A stretch of DNA of 64,000 nucleotides from Phyllobates terribilis. Taxonomy: Eukaryota. A program made the translations under genes and the position numbers. Below, piece by piece: positions 3,672 to 49,474 of this stretch; position 1 is the first letter of the stretch, and each line of letters opens with the position of its first letter. The notes beneath the pieces are model-generated. The model had not been told where the DNA came from and made no database searches. It was given only the letters and a program-made list of their open reading frames with translations. The DNA is taken from assembly GCF_046119375.1 (NCBI RefSeq), contig NW_027362767.1, forward strand, positions 384,896,001 to 384,960,000, written 5' to 3'.

Positions 3672-3868
3672 NNNNNNNNNNNNNNNNNNNNNNNNNNNNN
3701 NNNNNNNNNNNNNNNNNNNNNNNNNNNNNNNNNNNNNNNNNNNNNNNNNNNNNNNNNNNNNNNNNNNNNNNNNNNNNNNNNNNNNNNNNNNNNNNNNNNN
3801 NNNNNNNNNNNNNNNNNNNNNNNNNNNNNNNNNNNNNNNNNNNNNNNNNNNNNNNNNNNNNNNNNNNN
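3672..3868. other. Assembly gap (N run)
   Basis: Continuous n characters. Confidence 1.
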
Positions 3869-3899
3869 TATGATGTATATAATATTTATATTATATATA

Positions 3900-5523
3900 C
3901 AGTACAGACCAAAAGTTTGGACACACCTTCTCATTTGAAGATTTTTCTGTATTTCAAGACTTTGAAAATTGTACATTCACACTGAAGGCATCAAAACTAT
4001 GAATAACACATGTGGAATTATATACTTAACAAAAAAGTGTGAAACAACTGAAAATATGTCTTATATTCTAGGTTCTTCAAAGTAGCCACCTTTTGCTTTG
4101 ATGACTGCTTTGCACACTCTTGGCATTCTCTTGATGATCTTCAAGAGGTAGTCACCGGAAATGGTTTTCACTTCACAGGTGTGCCCTGTCAGGTTTAATA
4201 AGTGGGATTTCTTGCCTTATAAATGGGGTTGGGACCATCAGTTGTGTTGTGCAGAAGTCAGGTGGATACACAGCTGATAGTCCTACTGAATAGACTGTTA
4301 GCTGCTTTTTTCTTGCCATAATACAAATTCTAAGTAAAGAAAAACGAGTGGCCATCATTACTTTAAGAAATGAAGGTCAGTCAGTCCGAAAAATTGGGCA
4401 AACTTTGAATGTGTCTCCAAGTGCAGTTGCAAAAACCATCAAGCGCTACAAAGAAACTGGCTCACATGAGGACTGCCCCAGGAAAGGAAGACCAAGAGTC
4501 ACCTCTGCTTCTGAGGATAAGTTTATCCGAGTCACCAGCCTCAGAAATTGCAGGTTAACAGCAGCTCAGATTAGAGACCAGGTCAATGCCACACAGAGTT
4601 CTAGCAGCAGACACATCTCTACAACAACTGTTAAGAGGAGACTTTGTGCAGCAGGGCTTCATGGTAAAATAGCTGCTAGGAAGCCACTGCTAAGGACAGC
4701 CAACAAGCAGAAGAGACTTGCTTGGGCTAACGAACACAAGGAATGGACATTAGACCAGTGGAAATCTGTGCTTTGGTCTGATGAGTCCAAATTTGAGATC
4801 TTTGGTTCCAACCACCGTGTCTTTGTGCGACGCAGAAAAGGTGAACGGATGGACTCTACATGCCTGGTTCCCACCGTGAAGCATGGAGGAGGAGGTGTGA
4901 TGGTGTGGGGGTGCTTTGCTGGTGACACTGTTGGGGATTTATTCAAAATTGAAGGCATACTGAACCAGCATCGCTACCACAGCATCTTGCAGCGGCATGC
5001 TATTCCATCCGGTTTGCATTTAGTTGGACCATCATTTATTTTTCAACAGGACAATGACCCCAAACACACCTCCAGGCTGTGTAAGGGCTATTTGACAAAG
5101 AAGGAGAGTGATGGGGTGCTACGCCAGATGACCTGGCCTCCACAGTCACCAGACCTGAACCCAATCGAGATGGTTTGGGGTGAGCTGGACCGCAGAGTGA
5201 AGGCAAAAGGGCCAACAAGTGCTAAGCATCTCTGGGAACTCCATCAAGATTGTTGGAAGACCATTTCCGGTGACTACCTCTTGAAGCTCATCAAGAGAAT
5301 GCCAAGAGTGTGCAAAGCAGTCATCAAAGCAAAAGGTGGCTACTTTGAAGAACCTAGAATATAAGACATATTTTCAGTTGTTTCACACTTTTTTGTTAAG
5401 TATATAATTCCACATGTGTTAATTCATAGTTTTGATGTCTTCAGTGTGAATGTACAATTTTCATAGTCATGAAAATACAGAAAAATTTTAAATGAGAAGG
5501 TGTGTCCAAACTTTTGGTCTGTA

Positions 5524-5526
<3 letters not shown>
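3900..5526 (+). mobile_element. Full-length Tc1-superfamily transposon, DD38E type, with long TIRs
   Basis: TA on both flanks (3898-3899, 5527-5528). TIRs cagtacagaccaaaagtttggacacacc... extend about 265 bp (3900-4165 vs 5260-5526). Internal transposase ORF. Confidence 0.95.
4348..5364 (+). CDS. Tc1-like transposase (HTH + DDE). Open frame, but native ATG lost by a micro-inversion
   Basis: 338 codons without a stop. Motifs GRPR, WSDESKF, QQDNDPKH and SPDLNPIE; 38 residues between the second D and E. The ORF begins at GTG. Confidence 0.85.
   Translation: MAIITLRNEGQSVRKIGQTLNVSPSAVAKTIKRYKETGSHEDCPRKGRPRVTSASEDKFIRVTSLRNCRLTAAQIRDQVNATQSSSSRHISTTTVKRRLCAAGLHGKIAARKPLLRTANKQKRLAWANEHKEWTLDQWKSVLWSDESKFEIFGSNHRVFVRRRKGERMDSTCLVPTVKHGGGGVMVWGCFAGDTVGDLFKIEGILNQHRYHSILQRHAIPSGLHLVGPSFIFQQDNDPKHTSRLCKGYLTKKESDGVLRQMTWPPQSPDLNPIEMVWGELDRRVKAKGPTSAKHLWELHQDCWKTISGDYLLKLIKRMPRVCKAVIKAKGGYFEEPRI

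Positions 5527-5568
<42 letters not shown>
5527..5568. repeat. (TA)n microsatellite at the Tc1 insertion site
   Basis: About 21 TA units, directly visible. Confidence 0.95.

Positions 5569-5572
<4 letters not shown>

Positions 5573-7163: not shown

Positions 7164-13642
<6,479 letters not shown>

Positions 13643-28171: not shown

Positions 28172-49474
<21,303 letters not shown>

What the first reader, a model, noticed from the sequence alone, without database searches (positions are those of the whole stretch)
4298..4333. 28-bp micro-inversion flips the start codon of an otherwise intact transposase
Seen: 4302-4329 (ctgcttttttcttgccataatacaaatt) is bracketed by the 4-bp inverted repeat ttag/ctaa. 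Reverse-complementing it gives ...tattATG GCA AGA AAA AAG CAG, which reads in frame into CTA AGT AAA GAA AAA CGA GTG. That yields MARKKQLSKEKRVAIITLR..., a complete 350-aa transposase. As it stands the ATG points backwards (minus-strand MARKKQLTVYS... in ORF 4173..4358) and the plus frame starts only at GTG. Inference: a template-switch inversion silenced the element with no other lesion. It may define a non-autonomous subfamily or, speculatively, a reversible on/off state.
Basis: partly seen in the sequence, partly recalled or inferred. Interest (0 to 1): 0.7.

Follow-up and report, generated by a model that had tools for sequence, protein, structure and literature searches.

The report
Start-codon micro-inversion in Intruder transposon
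One copy of a known frog and fish jumping gene (Intruder, a Tc1 relative) has a 28-base stretch holding its start codon flipped, an ordinary copying slip that disables its transposase and also occurs in at least one other copy.

Summary
Window 4302-4329, bracketed by TTAG/CTAA, is the exact reverse complement of the sequence that relatives carry at this spot. Flipping it gives MARKKQLSKEKRVAIITLR..., which is the N-terminus of more than 20 fish and frog homologues.

The element (3900-5526) is a young, full-length Intruder (DD38E) Tc1-like transposon with about 270-bp terminal repeats. Seven related DNA copies all carry the ATG in sense orientation, so the window's state is derived.

The flip is not private to this copy. 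A Phyllobates terribilis protein model reads through the same flipped segment in a different copy. Six other first-reader notes of this scan, unchecked, report the same 28-bp flip elsewhere in this genome. Contigs from four organisms contain the unflipped form, with the joint exactly at 4298/4334.

As it stands, the first in-frame ATG is codon 186, after the first catalytic Asp, so no full transposase can be made. The intact frame reflects youth: about 1% divergence, with 9 non-synonymous against 4 synonymous private changes.

Best reading: a replication or repair micro-inversion of a known class marks a start-less subfamily that other copies' transposase moves. Nothing supports a reversible switch. 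Copy counts and a copy tree could not be obtained.

The parts
3900..5526 (+). Full-length Intruder (DD38E) Tc1-like transposon, flanked by TA at 3898-3899 and 5527-5528.
   Evidence: Identical 28-nt termini at 3900-3927 and 5499-5526. Pfam HTH_Tnp_Tc3_2 and DDE_3. D-89-D-38-E spacing. It is the only copy in the window.
3900..4169 (+). Left terminal inverted repeat, about 270 bp. Its inner part is an inverted copy of the last ~45 codons of the transposase.
   Evidence: Inverted-repeat arms 3892-4004/5422-5534 (89%) and 4004-4169/5256-5421 (99%). blastn gives 96.7% over 274 nt, and tblastn places residues 294-338 on 4204-4064.
5256..5526 (-). Right terminal inverted repeat. It overlaps the 3' end of the open reading frame.
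4298..4301 (.). TTAG, left arm of the 4-bp inverted repeat bracketing the flipped segment.
   Evidence: In read laying the 'opposite strands' joint shares 4 letters on either side.
4302..4329 (-). The 28-bp flipped segment. It holds 10 nt of 5' leader plus codons 1-6 (MARKKQ). The ATG lies on the minus strand at 4319-4317.
   Evidence: Loose ends at 4301 and 4330 in the runs read the exact reverse complement.
4330..4333 (.). CTAA, right arm of the 4-bp inverted repeat. In the unflipped form it supplies codon 7 (Leu) and the first base of codon 8.
4334..5364 (+). Body of the transposase frame. The frame is open from 4294, has GTG at 4348, its first ATG at 4849, and stop TAA at 5362-5364.
   Evidence: It is 92% identical to the 350-aa P0002.
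4173..4358 (-). 61-codon minus-strand ORF into which the flipped ATG now reads (..MARKKQLTVYS..). It is taken as a by-product with no function.
   Evidence: No relative was found in the protein collection.
4307..4344 (.). 8-nt perfect inverted repeat, TTTTTCTT (4307-4314) and AAGAAAAA (4337-4344), created by the flip. In the unflipped form the two are direct repeats.

Best explanation
The element is a young copy of Intruder (DD38E), a known Tc1/mariner transposon family of fishes and frogs. In an ancestor of this copy, the 28 bp spanning the last 10 nt of the leader and the first six codons were inverted in place between the 4-bp inverted repeats TTAG and CTAA.

This is the known class of exact micro-inversions made by a polymerase template switch or by microhomology-mediated break repair (inferred, not shown here).

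The flip puts the ATG on the wrong strand. [quoted passage not shown]

Both terminal repeats are complete. The copy should therefore still be cut and pasted by transposase from unflipped copies, which coexist in the same genomes. That would let the flipped version multiply as a start-less, full-length, non-autonomous subfamily.

The open frame is a sign of youth, not of selection.

Confidence by step:
- Real and derived inversion: 0.95.
- Loss of autonomous coding capacity: 0.85.
- Shared by several copies through descent from one event: about 0.6.
For: - Exact anatomy of the flip.
- The canonical N-terminus MARKKQLSKEKRV occurs in more than 20 fish and frog proteins.
- All 7 related DNA copies from metagenome contigs carry the ATG in sense orientation with colinear flanks.
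- P0043 of Phyllobates terribilis reads ..SCFFLAIIQILSKEKRV.., the same read-through of the flipped segment. It differs from the window copy at several residues, so it is another copy.
- Contigs of four organisms show a strand-change joint at 4298/4334 with 4 shared letters. Their loose ends at 4301 and 4330 spell the reverse complement of the 28-mer.
- The first in-frame ATG is at codon 186, after Asp163.
- The terminal repeats are intact.
- There are about 17 listed private differences from the run X1 majority. Of those in the frame, 9 are non-synonymous and 4 synonymous.
- Described micro-inversions are 17-33 nt, exact, and flanked by inverted repeats of 3-75 nt (PMC8755829).
- Six other scan notes describe the same flip in this genome. 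They are unchecked leads.
Against: - Only two flipped copies (the window and P0043) were verified with tools. The frequency of the flipped form in any genome could not be derived from the contig tables.
- No tree of copies could be built.
- At site 4410 (Asn/Lys) all four combinations with orientation occur: window flipped with Asn, P0043 flipped with Lys, P0122 unflipped with Asn, and many unflipped with Lys. This hints at recombination between copies, recurrent mutation or recurrent flipping, but rests on one sequence per class.
- Mobilisation in trans is inferred, not shown.
- Weak initiation at near-cognate codons (ATA, ATT, GTG) is not excluded.
Confidence: 0.6

Rival explanations
1. Recurrent flipping at a mutational hot spot. 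The TTAG...CTAA context inverts repeatedly and independently in different copies, in either direction, so flipped copies do not form one lineage.
For: - All four combinations of orientation with the Asn/Lys site 4410 exist.
- Flipped (P0043) and unflipped (P0122, P0032, P0130) Phyllobates models share the same 43-residue gap that the flipped window copy lacks.
- A different Tc1 family in the same genome was noted with a 40-bp flip near its ATG (s1-238370; unchecked).
Against: - A 4-bp repeat is at the weak end of what drives micro-inversions.
- Identical breakpoints in several young copies of an amplifying family are explained more simply by descent.
- The four-combination evidence rests on single sequences.
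- Recombination between copies during gap repair, or a splice in the gene models, would explain that evidence equally well.
Confidence: 0.17
2. Private lesion or assembly artefact of this one copy. The flip exists only here, or only in the assembly, and has no family-level meaning.
For: An N run (3672-3868) lies 30 nt from the element's left end, so the local assembly is not seamless. No read spanning the locus could be examined, because every run offered was contigs only.
Against: P0043 carries the same read-through in a different copy. Six other notes report it on other pieces of this genome. A clean 28-bp inversion inside a contig is not a usual assembly error.
Confidence: 0.05
3. Programmed, reversible on/off switch of transposase expression. 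The segment is flipped back and forth at a given locus to turn the element on and off.
For: Both orientations coexist in each of four organisms. The 36-bp unit is 12 codons, so the frame stays open on both strands in either state (reasoning). The flip sits exactly on the start codon.
Against: - The element has no site-specific recombinase. Only a DDE transposase domain set was found.
- The repeats are only 4 bp.
- The two orientations seen in contigs are explained by different genomic copies, and no single locus was seen in both states.
- Private changes are neutral-like at 9 non-synonymous to 4 synonymous, so this copy is decaying, not maintained.
Confidence: 0.03

Closest known systems
Intruder (IT, DD38E) Tc1/mariner transposons (Gao et al. 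2020, PMC7731502)
   Same: - D..D-38-E catalytic spacing.
- Element length of 1.63 kb.
- Long terminal repeats of about 270 bp, within the published range of up to 272 bp.
- TA target.
- A 350-aa transposase in unflipped relatives.
- Hosts are fishes and anurans, with very high identity between them.
   Different: This copy has its first six codons and 10 nt of leader inverted, so it has no sense-strand ATG. The paper mentions no inversion and no start-codon defect (0 occurrences). It also knew the family from only one anuran.
Exact micro-inversions flanked by short inverted repeats (Potapova, Kondrashov and Mirkin 2022, PMC8755829; short template-switch mutations, PMC5453318)
   Same: The flip is 28 nt, within the 17-33 nt range. 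It is copied precisely as the reverse complement. Inverted repeats lie directly at its edges, and 4 nt falls in their 4-7 nt class.
   Different: Here the event lies inside a multicopy mobile element. It can therefore be propagated to many loci and mark a subfamily instead of staying a single-locus variant.
Non-autonomous derivatives of Tc1/mariner elements (internally deleted copies, MITEs)
   Same: The terminal repeats are kept and its own transposase supply is lost. Movement, if any, depends on transposase from other copies.
   Different: The lesion is a 28-bp inversion, not a deletion. The element stays full length with an open frame. Deleted derivatives of the same family also exist in the runs, for example a joint from 4113 to 4830.
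Invertible DNA switches of bacteria and phages (fimS, hin, gin)
   Same: A short segment carrying an expression signal occurs in two orientations.
   Different: Those switches have a dedicated recombinase and longer specific repeats, and they flip at one locus. None of this is seen here.

Membership tests
Intruder (DD38E/IT) transposons | Catalytic triad with 38 residues between the second Asp and the Glu | tested here: met
   D163, D253 and E292 of the frame from 4294. There are 89 and 38 residues between them.
Intruder (DD38E/IT) transposons | Length of 1.5-1.7 kb with terminal inverted repeats, short or long (100-272 bp), and a TA target duplication | tested here: met
   The element is 1627 bp plus flanking TA on both sides, with repeats of about 270 bp. 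Ranges are from PMC7731502. The TA lies in a TA-rich tract, so the duplication itself is weak evidence.
Intruder (DD38E/IT) transposons | A single ORF encoding a 341-379 aa transposase with paired-like HTH and DDE domains | tested here: inconclusive
   The domains are present and unflipped relatives are 350 aa. This copy has no sense ATG before codon 186.
Intruder (DD38E/IT) transposons | Placement within the IT clade in a tree with reference Tc1/mariner families | not tested
   No reference IT sequence was available by reference. The nearest named hit from the order where IT was found is a Polyodon 'TCB1 transposase' at 67% identity.
Exact micro-inversion (template switch or MMBIR class) | A short segment replaced by its precise reverse complement, with colinear flanks | tested here: met
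   Loose-end consensus at 4301 and 4330 in run X1 equals the reverse complement.
Exact micro-inversion (template switch or MMBIR class) | Inverted repeats at the edges of the inverted segment | tested here: met
   TTAG/CTAA lie directly adjacent and are 4 bp, with no fifth pair. The chance of a given adjacent 4-mer pair is 1/256.
Programmed invertible switch | A site-specific recombinase and specific repeats longer than a few bp | tested here: not met
   Only transposase domains were found in the element, and the repeats are 4 bp.
Programmed invertible switch | Both orientations at the same locus within one sample | not testable with these tools
   The runs were contigs only. The left flank is an N run and the right flank is 1.2 kb away.
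Non-autonomous subfamily amplified in trans | Many copies at different loci sharing the same lesion and forming one clade | tested here: inconclusive
   A second copy was verified (P0043). Six further copies are only reported in unchecked notes.

The most novel reading that the evidence does not exclude
The TTAG...CTAA unit at the Intruder start codon is a recurrent, two-way flip site. Individual insertions would then toggle between a coding and a non-coding state, which would be a eukaryotic transposon with phase-variable transposase expression made by replication slips rather than by a recombinase.
Probability: 0.04. Interest if true: 0.8.

Novelty: new variant of a known kind. Interest (0 to 1): 0.3.

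Why it matters
If the flipped form is a large single-origin subfamily, it is a clean natural case of a full-length DNA transposon made non-autonomous by one tiny inversion. It would compete for transposase with its autonomous parents in poison-frog-type giant genomes, where Tc1/mariner elements reach tens of thousands of copies (PMC6278860).

The flip would also be a handy, homoplasy-poor marker for dating and tracing bursts of Intruder amplification and fish-frog horizontal transfer.

It also warns annotators. ORF callers will report a '338-aa transposase' from a GTG that a vertebrate ribosome is unlikely to use. Gene predictors splice the read-through into host gene models, as in P0043.

Otherwise it is an ordinary mutation in an ordinary repeat.

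Tried and rejected
No frog genomic copies could be fetched, so no census or tree of copies was made.
- Exact 23-mer scans for the flipped segment in metagenome, genome and viral contigs found nothing.
- The bacterial/archaeal genome scan by protein gave only distant hits.
- A word search with the read-through N-terminus (residues 1-40) found only P0043 as a flipped form.
- A search with the 61-aa minus-strand ORF, which would have counted both states, found no candidate.
- The window protein is not in the collection as an exact sequence.
- The search of earlier findings by sequence was blank.
- I first took Gln at site 4399 as a marker linked to the flip, which would have implied about 80% flipped copies in run X1. 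I rejected this because unflipped P0122 and P0127 also carry Gln.
- I tried to read the frequency of the flipped form from the depth bins and loose-end counts. I gave up because unflipped contigs also lay on the 36-bp unit on the other strand, and the bins are wider than the segment.
- The 43-residue gap shared by five Phyllobates models was considered as a second marker. The window sequence shows no microhomology at its edges, and the gap could be a GC-AG splice in the models, so it was not used.
- The N run at 3672-3868 was not filled or searched.

Full report
**What is there**

Window 3900-5526 is one full-length Tc1-like DNA transposon.
- Its 28-nt tips are identical in inverted orientation.
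- It has about 270-bp terminal inverted repeats: 3892-4169 against 5256-5534, at 89-99% and 96.7% over 274 nt.
- TA lies on both sides.
- It is the only copy of this family in the 64 kb.
- The long frame carries HTH_Tnp_Tc3_2, HTH and DDE_3 domains.
- Its catalytic residues are spaced D-89-D-38-E.

Together with the length and the long repeats, this fits the published description of Intruder (IT, DD38E): 1.5-1.7 kb, repeats up to 272 bp, hosts in fishes and anurans (PMC7731502). The closest proteins are 92% identical. They come from fish, from the poison frogs Phyllobates terribilis and Ranitomeya imitator, and from unnamed assemblies. The window is therefore very probably from a frog of that kind. 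I did not establish the species.

**The observation**

- TTAG is at 4298-4301, the 28-mer at 4302-4329, and CTAA at 4330-4333. The repeat does not extend to a fifth pair.
- Read as the reverse complement, the 28-mer supplies 10 nt of leader and ATG GCA AGA AAA AAG CAG, in frame with CTA AGT AAA... The result is a 350-codon frame with only its terminal stop.
- As it stands, the ATG lies on the minus strand at 4319-4317 and opens a 61-codon minus ORF.

**Which state is ancestral**

- The flipped-back N-terminus MARKKQLSKEKRVAIITLR is the N-terminus of more than 20 homologues. These include Phyllobates, Ranitomeya, Pygocentrus, Scophthalmus and Mastacembelus.
- A 64%-identical relative also begins MARKKQL (P0016).
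- At the DNA level, seven related copies recovered from metagenome contigs (L001-L004, L008-L010) all have the ATG in sense orientation.
- In L002 and L004 the window's two flanks align colinearly, 29 nt apart. The reverse complement of the 28-mer aligns between them with score 18. The 28-mer as written scores 6-7, which is the mean of 2000 shuffles (maximum 13).

The window's orientation is therefore the derived one, and the event is a clean in-place inversion.

**Is it private to this copy?**

No.
- The RefSeq model XP_073505328.1 of Phyllobates terribilis (P0043) contains ..SCFFLAIIQILSKEKRVAIITLRNEGQSVQKIGQTLKVS.. The stretch SCFFLAIIQI is the plus-strand read-through of the flipped segment, as in the window. 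The rest differs from the window copy at several residues, so this is another copy.
- The scan's own notebook lists six other first-reader notes with the same title on other pieces of this genome: s1-198930, s1-215435, s1-196831, s1-215492, s1-224973 and s1-224969. One of them says an unflipped copy lies in the same window. These are unchecked AI notes and I could not see their sequences. I treat them as leads only.

**Evidence from sequencing runs**

Only Logan contigs were on offer, no raw reads. I laid four runs from four coded organisms (A, B, C, E) on 3869-5526 at 85% likeness.
- The family is enormously abundant in all four, with 48,000 to 329,000 contigs laid. This fits the tens of thousands of fish-like Tc1/mariner copies reported for a poison frog (PMC6278860).
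- All four runs show a joint 'opposite strands' from 4298 to 4334 with 4 letters shared by both sides (5, 11, 10 and 15 contigs).
- Loose ends behind 4301 read AATTTGTATTATGGCA.. and loose ends before 4330 read ..TGGCAAGAAAAAAGCAG. Together these are the reverse complement of the 28-mer.
- Loose ends before 4298 and behind 4333 are the reverse complements of the opposite flanks. This is what an unflipped copy looks like when its middle piece is laid on the window.

The unflipped form with exactly these breakpoints is therefore present in all four organisms.

What these tables cannot give is the share of flipped copies. Unflipped contigs also lie on the 36-bp unit, the bins are 56 nt wide, and counting was capped.

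**Consequence for the element**

- In a vertebrate, GTG 4348 is not a credible start. Its context is aaacgaGTGg.
- The first in-frame ATG is at 4849, codon 186. This is downstream of the whole DNA-binding region and of the first catalytic Asp (residue 163).
- Seven upstream ATGs in other frames precede it.
- The copy therefore cannot make a full transposase, barring weak near-cognate initiation at ATA 4318, ATA 4321 or ATT 4327.
- Its terminal repeats are complete, so it should remain a substrate for transposase made by unflipped copies. This step is inferred.

**Why the frame is still open**

- Against the majority letters of run X1, the window copy differs at about 17 listed places, or about 1%.
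- Within the frame, 9 changes are non-synonymous and 4 synonymous. The non-synonymous ones are K>N twice, R>C twice, G>A, V>A, G>R, R>H and L>H. This is about what neutral decay gives.
- With about a dozen substitutions, escaping a stop codon is unremarkable.
- 'Otherwise intact' thus means young, not conserved.

**Mechanism of the flip**

Exact micro-inversions of 17-33 nt with inverted repeats of 3-75 nt directly at their edges are a described class. They are attributed to template switching at replication or to microhomology-mediated break-induced replication (PMC8755829; see also PMC5453318 and PMC8604942). The present event, at 28 nt, exact and with a 4-nt adjacent repeat, fits that class in every tested respect. 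Which of the two mechanisms acted cannot be told from the sequence.

A side effect is that two direct AAGAAAAA repeats of the unflipped form become an 8-bp perfect inverted repeat, 4307-4314 with 4337-4344.

**One origin or many?**

- Gln at site 4399 occurs in both flipped sequences but also in unflipped P0122 and P0127. It therefore predates the flip and is not a marker for it.
- At site 4410 (Asn/Lys), all four combinations with orientation exist. That could mean recombination between copies during gap repair, recurrent mutation or recurrent flipping. Each class rests on a single sequence.
- Identical breakpoints in several young copies of an amplifying family are most simply explained by one event followed by transposition. 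I put that at about 0.6, recurrent flipping at about 0.17, and a programmed reversible switch at about 0.03.
- Against a programmed switch: there is no recombinase, the repeats are 4 bp, this copy is decaying neutrally, and no locus was seen in both states.

**Limits**

- Exact-pattern scans of the three contig collections were blank.
- The two further protein word searches added only P0043.
- The N run at 3672-3868, 30 nt left of the element, was left alone.

**Verdict**

This is a real, derived micro-inversion that removes the start codon of a known transposon family. It is shared by at least two copies and probably marks a start-less, trans-mobilised subfamily. It is a neat marker and an annotation trap, but not a new kind of system.

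Noticed in passing
window 4064-4204 (minus strand) against 5229-5361: The left terminal repeat contains an inverted copy of the last ~45 codons of the transposase (81% at protein level). The long repeats of this element therefore overlap the 3' end of its own gene.
   Followed up: partly
window 3672-3868: A 197-base N run ends 30 nt before the element's left tip, so the left flank of the insertion cannot be read.
   Followed up: no
window 11391-12371 (-) and 40112-41080 (-): Two further Tc1-like transposase remnants of other families, 32% and 28% identical to this one over about 330 residues.
   Followed up: no
window 4707/4708-4835/4836, as seen in proteins P0043, P0122, P0032, P0130 and P0028: Five Phyllobates terribilis gene models skip the same 43 residues (QKRL...VRRR), which include the first catalytic Asp. 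This is either a 129-bp deletion subfamily or a GC-AG splice used in the models. The window sequence has no microhomology at the edges.
   Followed up: partly
window 4113-4116 joined to 4830-4834 (read laying joints, runs X5 and X24): Contigs of organisms B and E skip about 716 bp of the element (5-10 contigs each), with a matching loose end at 4830. This is an internally deleted derivative of the same family.
   Followed up: no
proteins P0005 and P0145-P0158; loci L001-L010: Near-identical Intruder transposases are filed under Vibrio parahaemolyticus and occur in ENA metagenome contigs of 1-2 kb. This is most likely fish DNA contaminating bacterial and metagenome assemblies.
   Followed up: no
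window 5527-5570: The element sits at the edge of a (TA)n microsatellite. The TA target duplication therefore cannot be told apart from the repeat.
   Followed up: no
window 4399, 4103, 4213, 4239, 4250 and 4260 (read-laying table 3): The four organisms have different majority letters at these sites. For example, 4399 is C in 82% of run X1 depth but A in over 99% of the other three. Each species therefore carries its own dominant Intruder subfamily, and organism A is closest to the window.
   Followed up: partly
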